Source: Oikopleura dioica
Taxonomy: Eukaryota; Animalia; Chordata
Direction of reading: 5' to 3'
NCBI GenBank assembly: GCA_907165135.1
Contig: OU015568.1
Span: 6,138,001-6,202,000 of the forward strand
Length of the DNA stretch: 64,000 nt
The translations under genes and the position numbers were made by a program. Under the pieces are notes generated by a model. It did not search any database. It saw nothing but the letters and a program-made list of their open reading frames with translations, and was not told the DNA's origin. The first letter of the stretch is position 1. Every line of letters begins with the position of its first letter. Of this stretch, positions 1 through 10,714 are shown piece by piece.

Positions 1-70
1 CGAGGATTTTTTGAAAATGACGAGACTTTTCGGCCCAATTTTAATAGACGGGATTCTTCGAGACTGAAAT

Positions 71-3000
71 GATTGTGACCCAAATTTTTAGTGGAATGGA
101 GCGCAGAAGAGCTTTCAATACTTTGAAGCCTCAACGCTCAAAGTTCTATCAGCACTCGGATAATAATCATGGCACTTATTATCGGTTCTTACGGGGCGTA
201 GGAACGGGATTTAACTATTGTGACTCTTTTCAAAGCGGAATGAGGCCAAAAGGGCAATATAAAGCTGATAAAAGTAACATGGAAGTTCACAAGCGTAATT
301 TCAATTCGCACTCGGACCATAACCACGGAACGAATATTGTTCAGTCCGAAATGTTTGCTAGATTAGAGCGGGATATGAAGAATTAATCTTTCCTTCTTAT
401 TGTGGCCCTTTTTCAAAGTGGAATGAGACCCAATGGCACTACAATTCATACATCCGCTATGAGACAGCATCATAAGTGGAATCATTTTTCGAAATTGGAA
501 AAAGGCTTTTGGGCTTTTATAATGAGATATTTTTGTGTACCCTTTCGAAAGCGGAATGAGACCGAGCGGAAAAGATATTCACAAGCACAACTTCAATTCG
601 CACCATTTTCATAACCATGGAACGAATATGATGAAGTCCAAAGTATCCGGCAAATTAGAGCGGGATAGAATCTCAGTCTTGAAAAACACCATTTTCTTAC
701 TCATATCATCTCATATTCATATCATCACTGTCTCCTGATTTCGATAAATCTCGATTGTGACCCCAACTAGTGGCTACGCGGGTGGTTATGAAAACCTTCA
801 TAACAAGAAACTGAATTTCCACAAAAGAACTATGGTCACCCATCACAGGAATAATCATAAATCAGCCGGGGATTGTATTTGTGAAATTTTTGCGAGATGT
901 TTTGTGACTCTGAAAGTCAATCTGCTTGCCGATTTATCCATAAGGGGAGCTTGAATCGACACCACAAAACTCATCATTTGTCGAAAGAATGGGAATTTAG
1001 ACTTGATTGTGACCCATTTGATAGTGGCATTTCTAAAAAAGAGATTTGCCTCAAGAAACAAATCTCGATTGAAAGTGAGAAAAAATATGGCTATTACATC
1101 CACAATAAATCTTTTGTTGGACATCATACCATCCATCATTTGCCAAAAAAAGAATAAAGTCGGGGTTGATTTTTCATTTTTTTTTATTTCGAGGTTGATT
1201 GTGATCCATTGTTAGCGGACTGCATTTCAGAAACAGAGCAATTTACAACAACAAAAAACAATTTTTGCAGCATCACAAAAAACACGGCCATTTTGAAAAA
1301 GGGATTGAAAGTAATTGTGACCTTGTAAAGTGGCGTGGACGTAAGAACAAAATCTAAAATAACCAAAAAACTTCACATGTCTTCGCATCACATCGCTCAT
1401 CATTCGCAAAATACAAGGAAAAAAGCAAAGGGATGAATTTTCAATTCATTGTGATCCTCTAAAGTTCCCCGTCGACTCAAAAACTAGACTTGCATCACTA
1501 CCGCCAGCATATGAAAAAAGTAATGACCAGAGCTCAGATGGGCGAGCTTCTCGGCCCGCGTCTGAAAGCTTTGATTCGCGAAGGGAAGGGGGATGAAATT
1601 GTATTTTGTTAAACGATTGTGGCCCTTTCTAGCGCTATTGATGTTCGATGTAAGAATCCAGCGATAAATGCGAAGCATACGCTCTCCCATCATGTCGCTA
1701 GTCACCTGAATATTCAAAAAATTGGAAAAGCCAACACGGCAATTTTGCTAGAAATTGTTCGAGCCTCTGAAGCGTATCAAGAGTTGGGATGGCTTTTTTC
1801 GCTATCTCTTGTTTTTTTAATTGCGGATTTGATTTTTAAAATTGTGATCCTTTGTCTAGTGGAGTTGATGTAAGAAAGAAAAACCCAATAATCCATCACC
1901 ATAGTTTCCTCTGCCATCACCTGATAAATCACCGTCGAGTTTATATCGCAAGAGGTACTAATGTCGAAACTTTGCGTTTTATGTTGCAAGGGAGGGATTA
2001 TTTTTGGATTGGTTGTGACCTTGAATAAGTGGCTATCGCACTGGGTGCTCAACCTTATCTTTGCACAGAGGACTAATGTTGCAGCATCATCGAAACAACC
2101 ATAAAGGAACGCGGATGAAAGATTTTTATTGTGACCCTCAATCAGTGGTCATCGCACGAGTACAAATAAGATAGTTTTAGATTCAAGAGCTTTGTTTCGC
2201 CACCATCATGCTAACCACGTCGATAAAAATCAGCGTCCCAACTATCGAAAAGAATGGATATCAGTCATTAAAATTGCTAGTTAATTTTTGTAAAAGGTCC
2301 CTTTCAGCGGGTACAGATTGTGATTCTCATTCAGTGGTTATCGGGCGAATGCTCAGAACCAGTTGGTTCTGTATTCATGGATTCTAGGTCGACACCATAG
2401 TACTCACCACATTGAAAAAGAAAAACAGTGCTCTAGCTGCAAAAAAGAATGGATATCAGTCAATCTTATTCCAAGTCCCGGTGATTGTGACTCTTTGTAA
2501 GCGGGTATCAACATCGAAAGCATTCGACCGAAAACTTTCGATTGCATAAAAGCCATTTTATGTCGCATCATGACAGTAACCATTCTTCTGAAAGGGATCG
2601 AAATATTTATTTGAAATTTCGAAGCGTTGAAGGTTTATTTTGATTGTGGCCCTTTCAAAGCACGAATAATTACGACAATGCTTCGATGCTCCGCCATCAC
2701 TTTTCTCGTCACGTGCACTCAAGTTTCCTAAAGTTTCCTTCGAAGAATTATAGCGTTAACGAGCTAAAGAGCTTCGTCTTAGCTTGGGATTAGATTATAG
2801 CAATTGCGGGTGATTGGGACCCTTTTCGAGCGGTTACAATTCGAAAGCGTCGAAGCCTGTTTTCTTCTTCCATAAAAATTACTTTATGAAACATCACAAA
2901 AACAACCATTTTATGGAATGGGACTATTTTTGGTCTGTTTATTACATTTGCGTTGATTGTGACTCTCCGAAGCGGGATGAAGTTGACTGCGAAGCCTAAT

Positions 3001-4492
3001 GGCCGAGGCAACTTCGTGTATCTCCATCATGGCCAAATGATTTACCATCACCTTTCGCATCACGGGGTTCCAGAGAATCTCGAGAAGCCGCTTTACAAAT
3101 GTAACATGAATGACTTCAAGTCAATTTTAGAAGGGATTGAATTTAATTGAACTAATGAGATTGTAATTACGGATGACTTGACATTAAGTGAAATTGTGAC
3201 TCTTAAAAAGTGGCATAAGGGCGAACGGGATGCTAAATAACTTCAATATGCCCCGACACCACTCAAATAACCACACTAATGCTTCTGAAAGAAAAGGCGG
3301 GATTTAAATCAGCCACTCTGCCTTACTTACGATTTACTTACGATTGTGGCCCTGTTTTAAGAGCGTACGATTCTAGGAGCACAAATCGAATGGTCGAGGG
3401 CATTATCTTTAGATTCCACAAAGGCCATATGATGAGGCATCATAACTGTAACCATCTTTCTGATCCCTCAGGTGGGGATCGAATTCATAATGGGAGTTGA
3501 TTGTGACCAAGCTAAAGTGGACTTTCGGAAAAGGGAGCTCCTTTCAGTAATGATATGCTTAGGCACCATTTCTGCAAGCACGAGTTCCTTCCTTTTGCCA
3601 AAAAGTTCAAAGTCGAAGAATTGAAAAGGCGTTTACCAGGTTCGGACTTTCAAAAATTTGAGCAATAAGGATTAGATACTTTTTGGGATGTATATCACAC
3701 GCAGAGTTTAGTTCGGTAAATTGTGACCCTTTGAGCGCTGGGAGGCCAGGAAGAAAGCCAGATGTGGCGATTCAGAGGCGGCATCACCAGCGAAATCATT
3801 TGCAGCATGCCTGCATACTTTGCAAATGATCGGATTCCTGAAAATAGTCATCGGTTTAAGTAGATCATTTTCCAAGAGGAGCATCGATCAAAAAATAACT
3901 CGAAGACAATATCACAGAGGCCATTTTATAAAAATACTTGGGTATATTGTGACCCTTTTAGCGCGGTAAGGCAAGCGAGAAAGCCAGATGTGTCGCTTCT
4001 GAAGCGGCATCACCAGGCACATCATTTGCAGAATAACTGCGTTCAATGGAAATGATCGGATTCTTGACATAATTTTTCGTTATTTTTTGCGGATGATTGG
4101 GATCATTTTCCAAGAGGAGCGACGATCAACATTAATAACTCGAGAATGATAAGACATCATCACAGAAATCACTTCATCAAGACTTACTTAGAATGGGATA
4201 GCCAAAGGCCCCACTTTCGGGACTGATTGTGACCATTTTTAGGGGAGCTACTATTCGAAATTTAACGTACACTAGGATGACAAGGCATCATCATCGAAAC
4301 CACTGTCCACATGGTACTCCTAACTGTTGTCCCGTCAATACGTTAGTTTGGGTTCTTGATCGTCTTCGATTTCTTGTCTCTGATTTCCCTCCTTCGTTTG
4401 GTTCAGTTCGATTGATTATTTTTGCTCTTACCAAAAATTTATCTTTTTTTAAAGTCTCAAATACCGAAATCGAATACCAACCAATATTTTAA
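71..4492 (+). other. Array of 26 intact plus 1 decayed exon-like cassettes, each encoding the His half (recognition helix, H-x4-H) of a BED-type zinc finger
   Basis: Each unit has (G/A/T)ATTGTG(A/G)(C/T)C followed 6-10 nt later by AG. First exon bases: 92, 236, 419, 552, 771, 917, 1025, 1216, 1331, 1465, 1633, 1860, 2030, 2146, 2335, 2502, 2661, 2831, 2973, 3211, 3362, 3518, 3736, 3962, 4115, 4243 (decayed copy at 3877). Skipping one base after the AG (phase 2) gives an open frame through H-[H/S]-x3-H in all 26, e.g. GMRPNGTTIHTSAMRQHHKWNH, GYRTGCSTLSLHRGLMLQHHRNNH, GYNSKASKPVFFFHKNYFMKHHKNNH. His codons vary CAT/CAC. The array continues beyond the window start. Confidence 0.85.
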
Positions 4493-4521
4493 AGGGTTCA
4501 ATTAGATAAAATATTAAAAAG

Positions 4522-6499
4522 TCCACTGTCAAATCCCATACCAAAGCCAGTCAAGCCAAGAATGCTCAGCAGCAACAACAGCAATTGGCCTCACTACAGG
4601 CCGCCCAAGCGGCTCAAAATCTTCCAATGCCTGGCGTCACTGGAATGCCTGGCACTTCTGGACTGAACATTCTCCCTCAGCAAGTGCTGCCAAAACCACC
4701 AAAGCAGCCGAAACAGAAGAAGTCGCCAGCTGGCGGAGTAAAGGCAGCACAGATGCAAGAGTTTGTCGCGATCTGCTCGGATATCATGACGAAAGTGTCC
4801 AAACACGAGCTTCCCGGCGACTTTTGGACTTCCGAGGAAATGTTCGAGTTCGTCTACGGCCTTGTCGAGCGACAACAGCGCGGAGAACCAGTCACTCAAA
4901 TCACCATCGAAGAAGCGCTCGAGTAAGTCTTTTCCTCATCGAACTCTTTTATCAATTTTATTAGTAAACTGAAGACACGCCACGAGTTCAAAGAGCAGAA
5001 CATTCTCGCCATCGAAGACGGAATGGCGCCTCCGACCAAGAAAATGAAAGTGGCAAACGACGAAGACGTCCGCACCATCGTCCAAATCTGGGAAAGCCAG
5101 CCAATGCGGATTTCGCTCGAAGACCATATCTTCCCAAGTAAGACTCTTCAATTTTTGAGCAACACTTTCTATCCTTCAATTTAGTTGACGACTACAGCCA
5201 GTTCTCTATCTCCCGAGTTCGATTGGACGGCGAATGTCTTGGCTTGATGCGATGCAATCATCCTCTCTGCGCCGAAAAGCCACTAGCCGACCGACTTCAC
5301 AAGTAAGCTTGGATGATCTTGTCATCTGTTCATAATGAAATTTAGGATTTGGTTCTCCTCGCGCACCGGGCAGCCACACAAGTACTCGGTCCGTCGCCAC
5401 CACGAGCAGTGCCACTTCGGAAAGATGCTCTCTCGATCTCAAATCATCGACGCTGCTGCCCTTGTGATTTCCGACTCGCAGCTTCCACTCGATAGCTGGT
5501 CCAAGCCATCATTCAAGCACTTCATCTCCAGCTGCGGCCAGTCGACCACTTTCAACAAGAACACGATCTCCGTCGAGGAAATCGTCGCTGCGATGCGAAA
5601 AGCGAATCGACCTCTTTCCGAATCTCATCGAATTGAGCTGATCAACGCTGGAAAAGCGATTCTCATCTACGAAACGGATCCAAACCGGGCTGAAGTGAAA
5701 CCAGAGCCAATCGAGAAGCCGGAAGAAAATGACGGCATTCAAATTGAAGAAATTGAAGGCGGAATCGATGATTCCATGGGAGAAGGTAAATTCTAGCTCC
5801 ATTTATGCTCGCTAACGTTGCTTTTTAGACATGCCCTTGTCCGATTTGCTTAACCAGCCACCGAAACCGCCTGCTCAGCTTTCGCTAGCCGCAGTAACTT
5901 CTGCATCTGGCGATGGCGGAGGAACTGCCACACCATCTGCGGCGTCAGGCGGGATGCCAACTGGTGCCACGGGCACCTCCAACGCTGCAAAGGCTCCACT
6001 TCCTCCCGGGAGCGCCGCGGCGGATGTTGTAGCTGCTGCGAAAGCTGGTAACGCTTCTGCTTCTGGTGGTGCAACTGGGGATCCTCCCGGCGCCGAAAGT
6101 GACGACGACGACCTCGAAGACGAGGATGAAGAGATGGAGGACGAGTCCGACATCCCGATAGACCAGGAGATCGTCAAATATCCTGGGAAGTGCACGGACC
6201 TCTATGCGGTGTACGAACGCTGGGCGCCGATTCTGTCCACAGAAGCGAAAGAAAAGCTCGTGGCGGACTTTTCTCTGAACGATCCTCTGTACCAGAAGCC
6301 AGAGGACATCGAAGACCCGGAACTGCGACTGACGATTCGAGACGAATGGGTGACTGTCTTCCCTGCCTGGCTGGCCAACTTCAAGCCCATGAATGCGAAG
6401 GACGACGGCTTCCAGCGGATACCACTTTCGGACATTCTGGCGATGCGGCGAATGTACAGAACTGAACTTCAAGCCCGCCGCGCTGTCCCTGCGAAATAG
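4522..6499 (+). CDS. BED zinc-finger protein with a hAT-transposase-like helical domain (domesticated hAT derivative); Q-rich N-terminus, low-complexity and acidic C-terminal region
   Basis: Exons approx 4522-4922, 4965-5137, 5185-5302, 5346-5785, 5829-6499, with GT-AG introns of 42-47 bp. Finger: YSQFSISRVRLDGECLGLMRCNHPLC...(phase-2 intron 5303-5345)...IWFSSRTGQPHKYSVRRHHEQCH, followed by LVISDSQLPLDSWSKPSFKHFISSCG, which resembles the post-BED helical domain of hAT transposases. No DDE catalytic region is seen. The 5' start is uncertain and the gene may be joined to upstream exons. Confidence 0.7.
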
Positions 6500-6651
6500 A
6501 AGCAGCTTTTTCAATTTAAATTATTCTACATGTAAACACATCCATTCGGATTTCACACTGCCTTTATCCTGCTTGCAGTTATCTTCTGCCGCCGCTGTAT
6601 CACAAATTAAAAAACTCGAAACTCAGAAAAAATACAAAATTGAAAAAGAAA

Positions 6652-7850
6652 TCAACCGATGACTCGTTCTCTTTTAATCGCCACTTGAAGCAGTTCATTG
6701 AAATCAATTTATTCGGTAAGAAGGTAAATGTAAATCTCAGCATTGTCTCGTTTAACTCGGAATTCACTCTGCATCGGTTCGAATATTTCATCAGGCCAGT
6801 CTGGATTTTCTGATGATTCTATGAGCTCGTCGATTTGCGCGATCTGAGTAAAAATAGTGAACAAAGCGTACTTCAAATAATCACCGTTTTGAGCGAGGTC
6901 TTGTCAAGAAACGCCATCAGAAACCATTTTCCACTGTCCTTGCAATAAATCGGGCTTCCGAATTCTTCAAAGGTTGGAATAAAGCCAACGCCTTCTCTCG
7001 GTGGGTTCCGCGGATTCACTCGCAAAATCGGTCGTCGTTCCGCCTCGTCTCGATCTTGGAAACGGACGTTGATCTTCGCGAAGAAACTGTTTTTCGGATG
7101 ATCTTAATTTTTCGCAATTGATTGAATGGTCAGTCGACTCACTGAGAAAGTAGTGCTCGTATCTATACGATCCAAACAGCACACAGTCTTCGTTTGCTTC
7201 CTGCATTACCTTCTTGTTGTACATTGTCAAGTCCGCGATGGGAGTTATTCTAAAACAGTGTTCCTCTACGATTTCAATTGAACTTACGATGCAGGACGTT
7301 CGAATTCTTCGACGGTTTCGAGAAACATGTGTGTTTCCATTTTCTTGGTCGACTTCACTTTTACGAATTTTCCATGAATTGGCCCAGTTCCTCCGTAAAA
7401 AATGTAGATTTCCCCGTCGGCGACCATCTACAGAGTATAGTTTTATTTTCGCAACAATCCTTCACCTGCTTGAATTTGTCTTCGATATCTTTTGGACTTG
7501 AATTGTGGTTGAGGTTGTCGTCTTTTGGAAAGAAACCGGGCATATAGTGGAACATGTGGTAATCGCATTCAAGCACTAGAAAAAACAGCCTAAATGGACT
7601 TAAATGTTGACAGTATCTTACAAGTGGCGAAATCAGTCTTATCAATGAGAGCTCCCGCGCAACCAAATCTGATGCCCTCGTCGATCCTCGCAATTCTAGC
7701 GTAGTTGTTCAGCATTTTCTTCTCTTCGTCTCCACGCCACGGGAAAGAGTTCTTTTCCATTTCATCGCGATCGGTTAATCTTTCGTTCGTGTACTCTCTC
7801 TTTTGTACCTCGGCCACCAAGAAGTCAGAGCAAAGCAGCTGGAGAAAAGA
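6652..7850 (-). pseudogene. Degenerate trypsin-like serine protease homologue (non-catalytic; frame-disrupted or unusually spliced)
   Basis: Minus-strand pieces ERLTDRDEMEKNSFPW (cf. RIVGG..FPW), RFGCAGALID (cf. CGGSLI) and EEFGSPIYCKDSGKWFLMAF (cf. GDSGGPLVC..W.L.G; catalytic Ser motif absent). The frames do not join cleanly. Confidence 0.45.
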
Positions 7851-8086
7851 AATAAAATTAAGTTTTTCATGAAAATGGCAAATTATGACTAGTTTAGAAA
7901 GAAAATGAAGATGTTTAGCTTTTTCGTACAAAAAGCGCAAAAGATATCAGATGCTCTAGAAATCATCGCGTTTGAAAACGGAGATTTGAGAAAATCAGCC
8001 GATGACTCGTATATTTTTCAAACTCGCCACTTGAAGCAGGTCAATGACAAAAGCAATATCCGCAACATTCAAAAAGCCGAACTATC

Positions 8087-10714
8087 ATGTTGAAAATTCT
8101 TGTTGCACTTTTATTATTAAAAGAATCAGAGCAGCGAAAATGCAAAAGCATTTCAAGAAGATATTTTTACAGAAAAAAAGCTTTGAAATCAACGAGGAGT
8201 CAGAATCAGCAGATAGATTTAACGGAAAACGACCAGTTCTTGTTCTTGACAGAGTCCAGATGGGGACGAGAAGTTCTTTTCGACAGTCAGGATAAATGCG
8301 CGACAAGTTCTTATGGAATCGGAACGCGTTTATTTTTGAGAAAGCGGTGCAATGCTCATTTTTGCTCGATTTACCACGGACTCAAAGGCGACAACTTTCT
8401 TTCTCCGACGATTTTTCTCACTTCACAGAATCGAGTCCACATTCAAATTACTGCCAAATCGGCAGTTAATTACGCAGTCGAGGTTTTTTAATTTTCTCAA
8501 ATGCACTTTTCAGACCTTTTTAGAGCCAAAGAAGCGTTCCTCTCAGAACTTGGTGCGTTTTATCAGTCAACTTTTACAAAAAATCAATAGAAGTCAATAT
8601 CGCGGGTTCAATCGAAAGATTCGAGCTCAAGGATGAAGTGAAATTTGACGACTCGAAAGGACGGTTCTTCTTTGGAGGAAGCTCAGCGAATATTGGAGCG
8701 TCGGTCATTTTTTCGAAGGCAGTAATTCGCAGAGATAGGTCTGTAAACAAAGAAGAACTCAGCGAAAACCCCGGAGAACTTATCTTCAGCAATGGAGTAA
8801 TGAGAGCTGAGGAGAAACGAAGAGTGTTGAATCGCTTGGTCGCGCATTCAAAGTCGAAATATCCTTCCAAAGACACGTGTCCCACAATATTCAAAAAAGC
8901 GAACAAAGGAGTTTCTCCGAAAGAGTTTCAAAGTCCAGTCGTTCGAAGAGTCGTTATGAAATGCTGGAACTTTGGAAAAATCATGGACAGAATTAACTGC
9001 CTCAATCGCGAATTGGAGAACAATTTTATGAAGCGACTTGAACAGACGCGCTTTGAATCGTTAAATCAAAATCGGAGAAGAATGAAGAGTCTTTTCCAGT
9101 CGTTCGATGGTCTTCAATGCGATGGAACGCTTCTCACCATCTTTCTCAAAAGCATCGATTCTAAGAATTACCTCTTTCCTTATCTCATGCTCGCTGCGGA
9201 TAAAAACTGCGCCCTGGCACTTCTAGTTCTCGCGAAAATCCACGAAAGTTCCGGCGATCTACTTACGGCGGCGATGTACTACAGCTACGCAGCGCAGAAA
9301 GCTTTCGAAAGAAGACGAGACCATCCCGAGCAAATGGTCTTCGTCGACGAAATTCGACTAAACGATGAAAAGGCGCTGGATCTTTTCGAAGGCGAGTCCG
9401 GCGGCGTCTACAACTGGTTGCTGGATCAAGCCACGAAAGGCGTCCAGAGCGCGCAAAATCACCTGGCGAGCGTCATCTACCACGGAAAAACTGGCGTCAA
9501 AAAGAATCTTTCCAAGGCTTTCAAGTTCTTCCAACAGGCGGCAAAATCGGAAACGACGGATCCAGACGCGACTTACAACCTTGGATTAATGAAGATGAAA
9601 GGTCAAGGTTCTGGAAGAGACATCGAAGGAGCGGTCGAGGACTTTCAAAAAGTGGTGGAGAGCAGTGCTCATGCTCCATCTCTGAATGCTCTGGGACACT
9701 ACCATTTGCAGGAAGAAAAGAACGCGGAAAAAGCAAAAGAGTATTTCGAAAAAGCGGCGGAACTGGGCGACCCTGACGCGATGCACAACCTTGCGATCAT
9801 AAACAAGCAGAATCTCATTCCCAATCAGCCGAGAGACGATGTCTACTGCTTCGGCCAATTTTATCGCGCCGCTCAACGAGGCCACATTGAATCCGCTTAT
9901 CAGCTGGTGCTCTTTTATTCCGACGGAATTCCAGGAAGTTTACCGGTTGTTCATAAAGACGCGGTTGTTTGGGCCAAGTTTGTTTTATCTGGAACCTCGG
10001 TGGAATTGCGCCAGACACTTCAGAATGGTTTGAAATTCGCGAAAAAGCAGCCAGGAGCGAGATAAAGATAGAATTGACATATTAATTAACCTTTATGAAT
10101 ACGGCTTAAGATCTTGCTCAAGCACTTTCTTTCTGCTTTTACGGTTTGAGCGCGATCGCTTCTTCTGATTTGGGAGCTTTCAATGCTGCCTTCTTGATTA
10201 GCGAAAAATTCAACAAAGAAGCAGATTTGGACTTGAGATTTTTAAAACTAGCGGTCGAAAACACAACGTATTTGCCCTACCGTCAAGCTCAAACACTTCT
10301 CGGAGAACGACTGGGTCCGGAAGAAGGAGAACGGCATCTCGTAGCGGCGGCAAAAGGAATGTGCCCTCGAGCAATGTTCAGTCTCGCTTCGGGCACGCGG
10401 GAATTATCGTAAGTTTTTTGAGACGCATTTATCTTGAAGCAATTTGAAATTGAAAGGAATTCGAGTCTGAGCGAGCTTGGACTGCTCAAGTTCAAAGACG
10501 ACTACCGACGAGTTCTTTTGAAGCGCTGCGCCAGGGTATGAAAAGGGGTTGAAATGATGGCTAATGGATTTAGTGGGGAAATGAAGAATCGATACCTTGT
10601 CAAATCTATCTACTGAAGTTTTACCTGCGAGACTACGGTCCACTTGCGATGAAAGTTTCCGGAGCAGCGATGACTGTTTTGTTTGTTCTTTCTTTAGTTG
10701 TTCGGTATTTCTGA
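8087..10714 (+). CDS. SEL1L3: SEL1L3-like protein (signal peptide, ConA/LamG-like domain, Sel1 repeats, C-terminal TM)
   Basis: MLKILVALLLL leader; RCNAHFCSIYHG...SPTIFLTSQNRVHIQI and FDDSKGRFFFGGS resemble the SEL1L3 N-terminal domain; Sel1 repeats (GVQSAQNHLASVIYHGKTGVKKNLSKAFKFF; GDPDAMHNLA); hydrophobic tail ending at TGA 10712-10714. Confidence 0.8.

What the first reader, a model, noticed from the sequence alone, without database searches (positions are those of the whole stretch)
71..4492. Library of at least 26 alternative zinc-finger recognition-helix exons (candidate splice-diversified DNA-binding system)
Seen in sequence: 26 units, roughly 110-240 bp apart, each with a conserved upstream motif and an AG. 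In all 26, phase-2 reading from that AG stays open through H-[H/S]-x3-H, although the spacer between motif and AG varies. A hydrophobic residue sits three positions before the first His in 24 of 26. In 12 of 26 there is an additional His seven positions upstream (H-K-x2-hydrophobic-x2-H-H-x3-H), identical in spacing to PHKYSVRRHHEQCH in the neighbouring gene. Cassette 10 continues HMKKVMTRAQMGE, versus HFGKMLSRSQIID in that gene. The residues before the His pair are hypervariable. Established: in C2H2 and BED fingers the helix before the first His carries the base-contacting residues; Drosophila mod(mdg4) and lola attach a constant N-terminus to many alternative finger exons. Inference: each cassette supplies the HH half to a constant C-x4-C exon, producing many fingers with different DNA specificity from one locus. 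I do not know of such a system described in tunicates, but I cannot search.
Basis: partly seen in the sequence, partly recalled or inferred. Interest (0 to 1): 0.96.

Follow-up and report, generated by a model that had tools for sequence, protein, structure and literature searches.

The report
Swappable half-zinc-finger exon array
An Oikopleura dioica gene appears to join one constant front end, holding the cysteine half of a zinc-finger-like motif, to any one of at least 26 alternative histidine-half exons, and the choice is probably steered by RNA base pairing between the start of the intron and a matching tag in front of every alternative exon, a mechanism so far known mainly from insects.

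Summary
Window 71-4492 (+) carries 26 units, each with a GATTGTGACCC tag, an AG 7-11 nt later, and a +1-frame ORF through HH-x3-H (25 strict, 1 variant). The other two frames stay open in only 5 and 6 of 26.

The reading is supported, but by sister lineages; the window's own constant exon lies upstream of position 1. In the Bergen O. dioica genome the same array sits in a 6.4 kb intron. Two metatranscriptome contigs join a constant exon (…LDGECQNLVYCCDPKCAEKPTFKRFF, phase-2 GC donor) to two different cassettes.

New here: that intron begins AG|GCAAGGGTCACAATCATCCCGC, the exact reverse complement of the cassette tag, plus a second helix matching the GGGAT motif. This is a docking-site/selector arrangement. 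In the window's selector cores, 17 substitutions keep G-U pairing, none are pair-breaking transitions, and 4 are transversions. Orthologous cassettes give dN/dS of about 0.3.

Cassettes downstream of the chosen acceptor stay in the spliced RNA together with the "neighbouring gene". That gene may also be a long 27th 3' end.

Zinc binding and DNA specificity are untested: no Pfam match and low-confidence models. The scan noted another lola-like locus elsewhere in this genome (s1-371365). I class this as a new variant of known kinds.

The parts
1..70 (+). Tail of a further cassette unit cut by the window start (contains ACGGGAT helix-2 motif at about 48-54); the array continues upstream of the window
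71..386 (+). Cassette 1: selector 71-81, acceptor AG 90-91, exon from 92, ORF reads through cassette 2 to stop 384-386 (97 aa)
216..386 (+). Cassette 2: selector 216-226, exon from 236, stop 384-386
398..614 (+). Cassette 3: selector 398-408 (A>G wobble variant), exon from 419
532..738 (+). Cassette 4: degenerate selector with 1-nt insertion, weakest predicted pairing (-17.2), exon from 552
753..954 (+). Cassette 5: selector 753-763, exon from 771
900..1157 (+). Cassette 6: exon from 917, ORF reads through cassette 7
1005..1157 (+). Cassette 7: exon from 1025
1197..1357 (+). Cassette 8: exon from 1216, variant His pattern HHKKHGH
1313..1436 (+). Cassette 9: exon from 1331
1447..1612 (+). Cassette 10: exon from 1465; tail most like the neighbour's finger exon
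1615..1873 (+). Cassette 11: exon from 1633
1840..2028 (+). Cassette 12: exon from 1860; ortholog in L003 8402 and L008 1132
2011..2174 (+). Cassette 13: exon from 2030; ortholog L008 1475
2127..2284 (+). Cassette 14: exon from 2146
2316..2500 (+). Cassette 15: exon from 2335
2483..2643 (+). Cassette 16: exon from 2502
2642..2793 (+). Cassette 17: exon from 2661
2812..2999 (+). Cassette 18: exon from 2831; selector TTGCGGGTGATTGGGACCC forms one near-continuous helix with the docking site (-32.4)
2955..3150 (+). Cassette 19: exon from 2973
3192..3307 (+). Cassette 20: exon from 3211
3342..3500 (+). Cassette 21: exon from 3362
3499..3668 (+). Cassette 22: exon from 3518 (second AG after the selector); ortholog L008 2488
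3719..3829 (+). Cassette 23: exon from 3736
3856..3944 (+). Decayed cassette, paralog of cassette 25: both the selector and the His codons are lost
3945..4055 (+). Cassette 24: exon from 3962 (recent duplicate of 23)
4095..4226 (+). Cassette 25: exon from 4115; selector TTTTTTGCGGATGATTGGGATC pairs over about 20 nt
4225..4492 (+). Cassette 26, last in the array: exon from 4243, stop 4490-4492; ortholog L008 3140 (GATIKNLTYTRMTRHHHSNH)
4521..4563 (+). Block identical across lineages. It contains AG 4549-4550, the only AG whose phase fits the constant donor and opens the ORF2 frame at 4551. Candidate selector-less 27th acceptor.
4551..6499 (+). 'Neighbouring gene' (ORF2), co-transcribed with the array. 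Exon A runs to 4922 (donor GA|GT), B 4964-5137, C 5185-5302 (paralogous Cys half), D 5346-5785 (His half), E 5829-6499.

Best explanation
The array is the variable 3' region of one gene. Its constant 5' exons lie just upstream of the window. They encode an N-terminal region of about 135 aa that ends in the Cys half of a zinc-finger-like motif and in a phase-2 GC donor. That donor is spliced to one of many acceptors. Each acceptor opens a short ORF that supplies the His half (HK-x2-M-x2-HH-x2-NH) plus a variable tail and its own stop, giving a family of proteins of roughly 170-200 aa with one common front and different C-terminal half-fingers. I infer that acceptor choice is steered by RNA pairing. 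The first 25 nt or so of the intron (docking site, GCAAGGGUCACAAUCAUCCCGCAAAAA) pairs with a bipartite selector in front of each cassette: (GC)GGGAU, then 0-45 nt, then GAUUGUGACCCUU. The pairing loops out everything in between and places the donor within a few nucleotides of an acceptor that lies 7-11 nt beyond the helix. Only one docking site exists, so only one selector can be engaged at a time. Shown: the array, its frames, selector conservation and wobble pattern in the window; the constant exon, docking site and two spliced junctions in sister lineages. Inferred: that the window's own lineage has the same constant exon and docking site, that most cassettes are used, that pairing drives the choice, and that the motif binds zinc and nucleic acid.
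For: Array and frames.

Orthologous array: in Bergen it sits between the constant exon and the ORF2 ortholog. Further arrays are in L008 (20 cassettes) and L010 (15).

Spliced junctions: both land exactly at AG|GC. L009 maps 99.7-100% to L003 as 2511-2807 / 2955-3074 / 9459-10137 and so on. P0011/L010 joins the same exon to another cassette through a Ser codon.

Docking site: GCAAGGGTCACAATCATCC follows the donor immediately in L003, L011 and L012, and occurs once on the + strand of L003. It is also seen as the read-through peptide RQGSQSS in P0012 and P0022.

Duplex energies: the 26 window selectors average -25.9 kcal/mol against -12.9 for control 75-mers, whose 1% quantile is -23.4. In the Bergen intron, the 13 windows at or below -22 fall within the cassette blocks (at or next to selectors) and none in the 5.7-8.3 kb insert.

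Selector substitutions: 17 pair-keeping transitions, 0 pair-breaking transitions and 4 transversions in the window, binomial p about 1.5e-5. L008 gives 7 to 0.

Second helix: GGAT lies within 70 nt upstream of 19 of 25 selectors, against a background of 0.22.

Selection: dN/dS is 0.30 for orthologous cassettes. A decayed cassette has lost its selector and its His codons together.
Against: No transcript and no constant exon from the window's own lineage could be seen. The listed RNA runs belong to a divergent lineage and laid reads only on 4516-4587.

Only two cassette junctions are documented, both from assembled metatranscriptome contigs.

The helix would cover intron positions +3/+5 onward, overlapping the U1/U6 binding site. 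The selector also overlaps the likeliest branch site (GUGAC, with the A 10-14 nt before the exon), so pairing could inhibit as easily as activate.

The second helix is absent from about half the selectors in L003 and L008.

Several Bergen cassettes have lost a His.

No protein family model, solved structure or confident fold supports 'zinc finger'.
Confidence: 0.75

Rival explanations
1. One or two cassettes are real exons. The rest are decaying tandem duplicates (pseudo-exons) that merely ride along in a long intron or 3' UTR.
For: Only two junctions are documented. Some Bergen cassettes lack a His or an ORF. There is one clearly decayed unit in the window. Turnover between lineages is rapid, and 9 of 25 window selector-bearing units have no clear ortholog.
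Against: All 26 of 26 are open in one frame, against 5-6 in the others. The His positions are invariant or nearly so across 55 cassettes. dN/dS is 0.30. Selector substitutions are restricted to pair-keeping transitions. The decayed unit shows what neutral decay looks like, and it is the exception.
Confidence: 0.12
2. The cassettes are mutually exclusive internal exons in the Dscam style. Each would have its own donor at the GGGAT motif, as proposed in note s1-387128, and be spliced on to exon A of the downstream gene.
For: A conserved (G)GGAT follows most cassettes. The downstream ORF2 is conserved upstream of any ATG. ORF2 is on the same RNAs.
Against: GGGAT falls in all three frames relative to the cassette ORF and lies after the stop codon in units 22-24. 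The transcripts L004, L009 and L010 run colinearly through the region downstream of a cassette without a junction, and L004 and L010 carry the motif itself unspliced. Serial or onward splicing would break the frame. The motif is complementary to the ATCCCGC part of the docking site.
Confidence: 0.05
3. The GATTGTGACCC element acts on its own, as an unusually strong branch site or splicing-factor site, or as a DNA element. Its complementarity to the intron start would then be irrelevant.
For: GUGAC resembles a yUnAy branch site at a suitable distance of 10-14 nt from the exon. The helix would occlude part of the 5' splice-site region.
Against: There are 13-20 nt of complementarity placed directly at the donor and conserved in at least three lineages. 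A second, independent complementary motif pair exists. The 17 to 0 excess of G-U-compatible substitutions is expected for RNA-RNA pairing, not for a protein or DNA site.
Confidence: 0.08

Closest known systems
Drosophila lola and mod(mdg4) (recalled from general knowledge; lola cited in PMC6191721 reference list)
   Same: One set of 5' constant exons is joined to one of about 20-30 alternative 3' exons. These carry zinc-finger sequence and their own stop codons, giving many putative nucleic-acid-binding isoforms from one locus.
   Different: There is no BTB domain in the constant part. The variable exon carries only the His half of one finger, not complete fingers. The cassettes are 110-240 bp apart with no poly(A) signals of their own. 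Trans-splicing is not required. The organism is a tunicate.
Docking-site/selector competing RNA pairings: Drosophila PGRP-LC 3' variable region (PMC6191721) and Dscam1 exon 6 cluster (Graveley 2005, as cited there)
   Same: A single docking site sits in the intron after the constant exon, and one complementary selector sits upstream of every variable exon. Selector variation keeps pairing. Tandem duplication copies exon and selector together (PMC6071210).
   Different: The docking site starts 2-4 nt after a GC donor instead of lying deep in the intron. Selectors end only 7-11 nt before the acceptor and overlap the probable branch site. The selector is bipartite with a variable internal loop. 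There are 26 to more than 40 alternative acceptors rather than 3 (PGRP-LC), and no cassette donors (unlike Dscam). No experimental test exists.
Dscam1 exons 4 and 6, each encoding half of an Ig domain (recalled)
   Same: The variable exon supplies one half of a folded domain and the constant exon supplies the other.
   Different: The domain here is a small Cys/His motif, and the gene product is a short, probably nuclear protein rather than a surface receptor.
Another lola/mod(mdg4)-like locus noted by this scan in the same genome (s1-371365)
   Same: It is in Oikopleura dioica, with one N-terminus and alternative terminal exons carrying DNA-binding modules.
   Different: It lies on another piece of the genome, with few tails of different domain types. 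No tag/docking system is reported there. I did not examine it.

Membership tests
lola/mod(mdg4)-type alternative 3' exon locus | Shared 5' exons spliced to one of many alternative 3' coding exons, each with its own stop | tested here: met
   26 cassettes with own stops. Two different junctions from one constant donor are seen in sister lineages. Not seen for the window's own lineage.
lola/mod(mdg4)-type alternative 3' exon locus | BTB/POZ domain in the constant part | tested here: not met
   Pfam scan of ORF1 and P0011 finds no BTB and no other family.
lola/mod(mdg4)-type alternative 3' exon locus | Variable exons encode complete zinc fingers (C2H2 pair or FLYWCH) | tested here: not met
   The Cys ligands are in the constant exon and only the His half is in the cassettes.
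Docking-site/selector competing RNA pairing | Single docking site in the intron adjoining the constant exon | tested here: met
   GCAAGGGTCACAATCATCC(C/T)GC directly follows the donor in L003, L011 and L012, and occurs once on the + strand of L003. It lies outside the window itself.
Docking-site/selector competing RNA pairing | A selector complementary to the docking site upstream of each variable exon | tested here: met
   All 26 units have one. Mean duplex energy is -25.9 against a control of -12.9. Bergen intron minima fall within the cassette blocks, at or next to selectors.
Docking-site/selector competing RNA pairing | Evolutionary signature of pairing: substitutions keep base pairs | tested here: met
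   17 pair-keeping against 0 pair-breaking transitions in the window; 7 to 0 in L008. No true double compensatory change could be scored because the docking site is nearly invariant.
Docking-site/selector competing RNA pairing | Disruption and compensatory mutation change exon choice | not testable with these tools
   This needs a minigene or in vivo editing.
C2H2 / BED-type zinc finger | Match to a curated family model | tested here: not met
   No Pfam hit at E up to 5 for ORF1, P0011, P0009 or P0005. No PDB sequence hit. Atlas BED clusters appear only at scores of 0.77-0.78, which are leads only.
C2H2 / BED-type zinc finger | Cys and His ligands on a beta hairpin plus helix | tested here: inconclusive
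   C-x5-C-x4-C is conserved between the paralogs and HH-x3-H is invariant. AF2 places the Cys after three strands and the His on a helix, but mean pLDDT is only 59.6 and 53.1. Foldseek finds nothing.
Mutually exclusive internal exon cluster (Dscam type) | Each variable exon has a donor joined to a common downstream exon in a fixed phase | tested here: not met
   There is no consistent donor or phase, stops precede the candidate motif in units 22-24, and transcripts are colinear downstream of cassettes.

The most novel reading that the evidence does not exclude
A chordate gene uses RNA pairing placed directly at the splice sites: a docking site 2-4 nt after a GC donor and selectors 7-11 nt before each acceptor. 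This folds introns of 0.4-6 kb into a structural mini-intron. A spliceosome adapted to introns of about 47 nt could then pick, perhaps stochastically, one of 40 or more fast-evolving half-finger cassettes. The result would be a birth-and-death repertoire of nucleic-acid binders, with a selector-less 27th acceptor (4551) fusing the same front end to the long ORF2 protein.
Probability: 0.3. Interest if true: 0.92.

Novelty: new variant of a known kind. Interest (0 to 1): 0.86.

Why it matters
Large alternative-exon arrays steered by docking/selector RNA pairing are textbook cases from arthropods. Outside arthropods I know of only small or predicted cases in vertebrates (recalled from memory). 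I found no report for tunicates in the searched literature.

This locus would show that the same solution arose in a chordate with an extremely compact genome. It has three unusual features:
- The pairing elements abut both splice sites.
- The donor is a non-canonical GC.
- The swapped unit is half of a metal-binding motif.

It offers a compact system (about 4-6 kb, 26 to more than 40 choices) for asking how RNA structure substitutes for intron definition. The rapid turnover of cassettes between O. dioica lineages hints at diversifying function. It also changes the annotation: the Bergen annotation has no gene over the array and starts the downstream gene at an internal ATG.

Tried and rejected
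1. RNA reads: the single read-laying run (X4-X6, X1) put reads only on 4516-4587. The runs belong to another lineage, so they say nothing about splicing in the window.

2. Bergen scaffold FN653195 (L001) holds a fragment of the ORF2 ortholog, but with repeats and gaps upstream and no array. It is probably an allelic or misassembled scaffold. FN653025 (L003) was the useful one.

3. GGGAT as a non-canonical donor, and serial splicing of cassettes: rejected on frame, on stops, and on transcripts that run colinearly downstream of cassettes.

4. Trans-splicing to the downstream Cys-half exon: unnecessary once the upstream paralogous exon was found.

5. SL trans-splicing supplying a start codon for ORF2: the O. 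dioica SL has no ATG (PMC6883708).

6. Family and structure searches gave nothing usable: Pfam, PDB sequence search, two AlphaFold runs, Foldseek and the ESM Atlas.

7. A docking/selector covariation test using the Bergen C>T change in helix 2 showed no clear signal.

8. The pyrimidine bias at the first exon base (23 of 26 in the window) is not shared by other lineages, so I draw no conclusion from it.

9. dN/dS of the window against other lineages is unusable because synonymous sites are saturated.
Full report
**1. The observation**

Window 71-4492 (+ strand) holds 26 units spaced 105-237 bp apart. Each unit has three parts:
- the core ATTGTGACC(C);
- an AG 7-11 nt after the core, which is the first AG in 25 of 26 units;
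- an ORF, read with one exon base completing a codon, that stays open through a His cluster and then ends at its own stop.

The pattern GATTGTGACCC with up to 2 mismatches gives 37 hits in 64 kb against 12.3 expected. Of these, 24 lie on the + strand of the array. Over the same spans the other two frames are open in only 5 and 6 of 26 units.

Counts for the protein motif:
- strict H-[HS]-x3-H: 25 of 26;
- hydrophobic residue at -3: 24 of 26;
- His at -7: 11 of 26.

The first 70 bases of the window are the tail of a further unit, so the array runs on upstream. One unit (3856-3944) is a decayed copy of cassette 25 that has lost both its tag and its His codons.

**2. Organism and the reads test**

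Relatives of the downstream gene are annotated as Oikopleura dioica. The window is only 70-80% identical in coding DNA to the Bergen reference, so it comes from another O. dioica lineage.

The RNA runs offered under the same species label laid reads only on 4516-4587. Their overhangs match other lineages. This test therefore says nothing about splicing in the window.

**3. The constant exon exists, in sister lineages**

A search with the neighbour's finger exon led to the Bergen scaffold FN653025 (L003). There, 14 tagged units lie between positions 3473 and 9465, upstream of the ortholog.

An exact-pattern scan of metagenome contigs with a conserved 35-mer returned L009, a 2.75 kb metatranscriptome contig. 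It maps at 99.7-100% identity to L003 in these pieces:
- 2511-2807;
- 2955-3074;
- 9459-10137;
- then the spliced exons of the downstream gene.

Its first ORF (181 aa) reads …RVFLDGECQNLVYCCDPKCAEKPTFKRFF|RAFRDYKIDKVHKSTMLRHHSRNH…stop. This is a Cys-half exon ending AG|GC (phase 2), joined to the last tagged cassette across a 6.4 kb intron that contains the whole array.

A second contig from another sample and lineage (L010, protein P0011) joins the same exon, at the same donor, to a different cassette: FKRFF|S|PFKPGAGTYKHRYYLKNYLLGAHHNSKH.

The shared k-mers at the junctions are too short (6 nt) for an assembly artefact. The constant region is paralogous to exons B-C of the downstream gene: RVRLDGECLGLMRCNHPLC.EKP.

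**4. The tag has a partner**

In L003, L011 and L012 the intron after the constant exon begins GCAAGGGTCACAATCATCC(C/T)GCAAAAATCAGG. AAGGGTCACAATC is the exact reverse complement of the cassette consensus GATTGTGACCCTT. It occurs once on the + strand of L003.

The next bases, ATCCCGC, are complementary to the (GC)GGGAT motif that lies 0-45 nt upstream of most selectors. Another reader had taken that motif for a donor.

Supporting numbers:
- RNAduplex of this docking sequence against the 75 nt before each of the 26 window acceptors averages -25.9 kcal/mol. Random 75-mers from the same window average -12.9, with a 1% quantile of -23.4. The predicted structure is almost always the two expected helices.
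- Scanning the Bergen intron with its own docking site finds 13 windows at or below -22. They fall within the cassette blocks, at or next to selectors, and none falls in the 5.7-8.3 kb insert.
- In the 10-nt selector core of the window, the substitutions are 12 C>T, 5 A>G, 0 G>A, 0 T>C and 4 transversions. That is 17 pair-keeping transitions against 0 pair-breaking ones (p about 1.5e-5). L008 gives 7 to 0.
- GGAT lies within 70 nt upstream of 19 of 25 selectors, against a background probability of 0.22.
- Most promoter-proximal selectors in L003 and L010 are the shorter TTTGTGACCC, while most distal ones are ATTGTGACCC.

The substitution pattern is what pairing in the sense RNA predicts. It is not what a protein or DNA site predicts.

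**5. Selection on the cassettes**

Arrays in L008 (20 units) and L010 (15 units) show the same architecture and the consensus G-x-R…HK-x2-M-x2-HH-x2-NH.

Between the closer lineages, 11 orthologous pairs give pooled pN 0.10, pS 0.29 and dN/dS 0.30. Between the window and the others, synonymous sites are saturated (pN 0.34), and 9 of the 25 window units scored have no clear ortholog. Turnover is therefore fast.

**6. What the mature RNA looks like**

The array contains almost no poly(A) signals.
- L010 runs on for more than 2 kb through downstream cassettes.
- L009 runs from its cassette straight into exon A of the downstream gene.
- L006 and L007 have the downstream gene's introns removed but still carry the last two cassettes with their selectors.

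So the cassettes behave as alternative acceptors. Everything downstream of the chosen acceptor, including ORF2, appears to stay on the RNA. Contigs cannot prove single molecules.

**7. The downstream gene may be a 27th choice**

The ORF2 frame is open and conserved for 60-85 codons upstream of its first ATG. Length differences between lineages (234, 180 and 255 nt) are multiples of three, and Bergen has no ATG there at all.

The frame closes 11-14 codons further up. Within that short span, AG 4549-4550 is the only AG whose phase fits the phase-2 constant donor. It lies inside a 35+ nt block that is identical in all lineages.

This acceptor has no selector (-7 to -10 kcal/mol). The region around it is itself weakly docking-like. 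I put about 0.5-0.6 on a long fused isoform. The O. dioica spliced leader has no ATG (PMC6883708), so SL trans-splicing alone would not explain the ATG-less conserved ORF.

**8. What the protein is**

Nothing in Pfam, PDB sequences or the Atlas identifies it. AlphaFold predicts three strands, then the Cys region, then a helix carrying HH-x3-H. Confidence is low, at pLDDT 59.6 and 53.1, and Foldseek finds nothing. 'Zinc finger' rests on the conserved C-x5-C-x4-C … H-x7-HH-x3-H pattern. 'DNA recognition' is inference.

**9. Open mechanistic points**

The helix would begin at intron position +3 to +5. The selector contains the likeliest branch site (GUGAC, with its A 10-14 nt before the exon). 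Pairing must therefore either be transient or act in an unusual geometry.

I favour activation by looping-out in a genome whose introns are mostly about 45 nt. That is inference by analogy with PGRP-LC and Dscam (PMC6191721).

**10. Comparison and novelty**

In function the locus resembles lola and mod(mdg4), and in mechanism PGRP-LC and Dscam. It fails the defining features of the former (no BTB, no complete fingers). It differs from the latter in the placement of the elements, the number of choices, and the taxon.

Literature searches found no Oikopleura report. The scan itself noted a different lola-like locus in this genome (s1-371365), which I did not examine.

**Verdict:** a real feature, and a new variant of known kinds.

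Noticed in passing
window 4485-4563: A block of 35+ nt is identical across all O. dioica lineages seen, although neighbouring coding sequence differs by 20-30%. The region upstream of it (AAAGGGTTCAAT … GTCAAATCCC) resembles the docking site and pairs moderately with the selectors: mean -21.9 against a control of -14.7. It might be a decoy or balancer site.
   Followed up: partly
window 3719-4226: Cassettes 23 and 24, with what follows each of them, are a recent two-unit duplication. In the first copy the cassette-25-like unit (3856-3944) has decayed. This is a snapshot of birth and death within the array.
   Followed up: partly
window 4964-5302 versus L009 ORF1: Exons B-C of the downstream gene are paralogous to the constant exons of the cassette gene, with the same fold-level motif and a phase-2 intron at the same place within the finger. 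The locus looks like a tandem duplication in which only the upstream copy grew an array.
   Followed up: partly
L003 5713-8330: A stretch of about 2.6 kb without cassettes or selector-like pairing interrupts the Bergen array and is absent from L008. It is probably an insertion, perhaps a transposon.
   Followed up: no
L001 (FN653195.1) 6400-10000: A second Bergen scaffold carries a truncated copy of the ORF2 ortholog behind repeats, minisatellites and two assembly gaps, with no array. It is likely an allelic or misassembled scaffold of the 2010 assembly.
   Followed up: partly
selectors throughout 71-4235: The 3' end of the O. dioica spliced leader (…CGATTGTCTAACAG, PMC6883708) shares GATTGT with the selector consensus (C)GATTGTGACCC…AG. 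This is probably chance.
   Followed up: no
L003 1-10000: The Bergen annotation calls no gene across the constant exons and the array, and starts the downstream gene at an internal ATG (MTKVSK). The locus is effectively unannotated.
   Followed up: partly
window 1-6000: RNA runs filed under the same species label do not map at 95% identity even to the conserved downstream gene. This fits the deep divergence between O. dioica lineages.
   Followed up: partly
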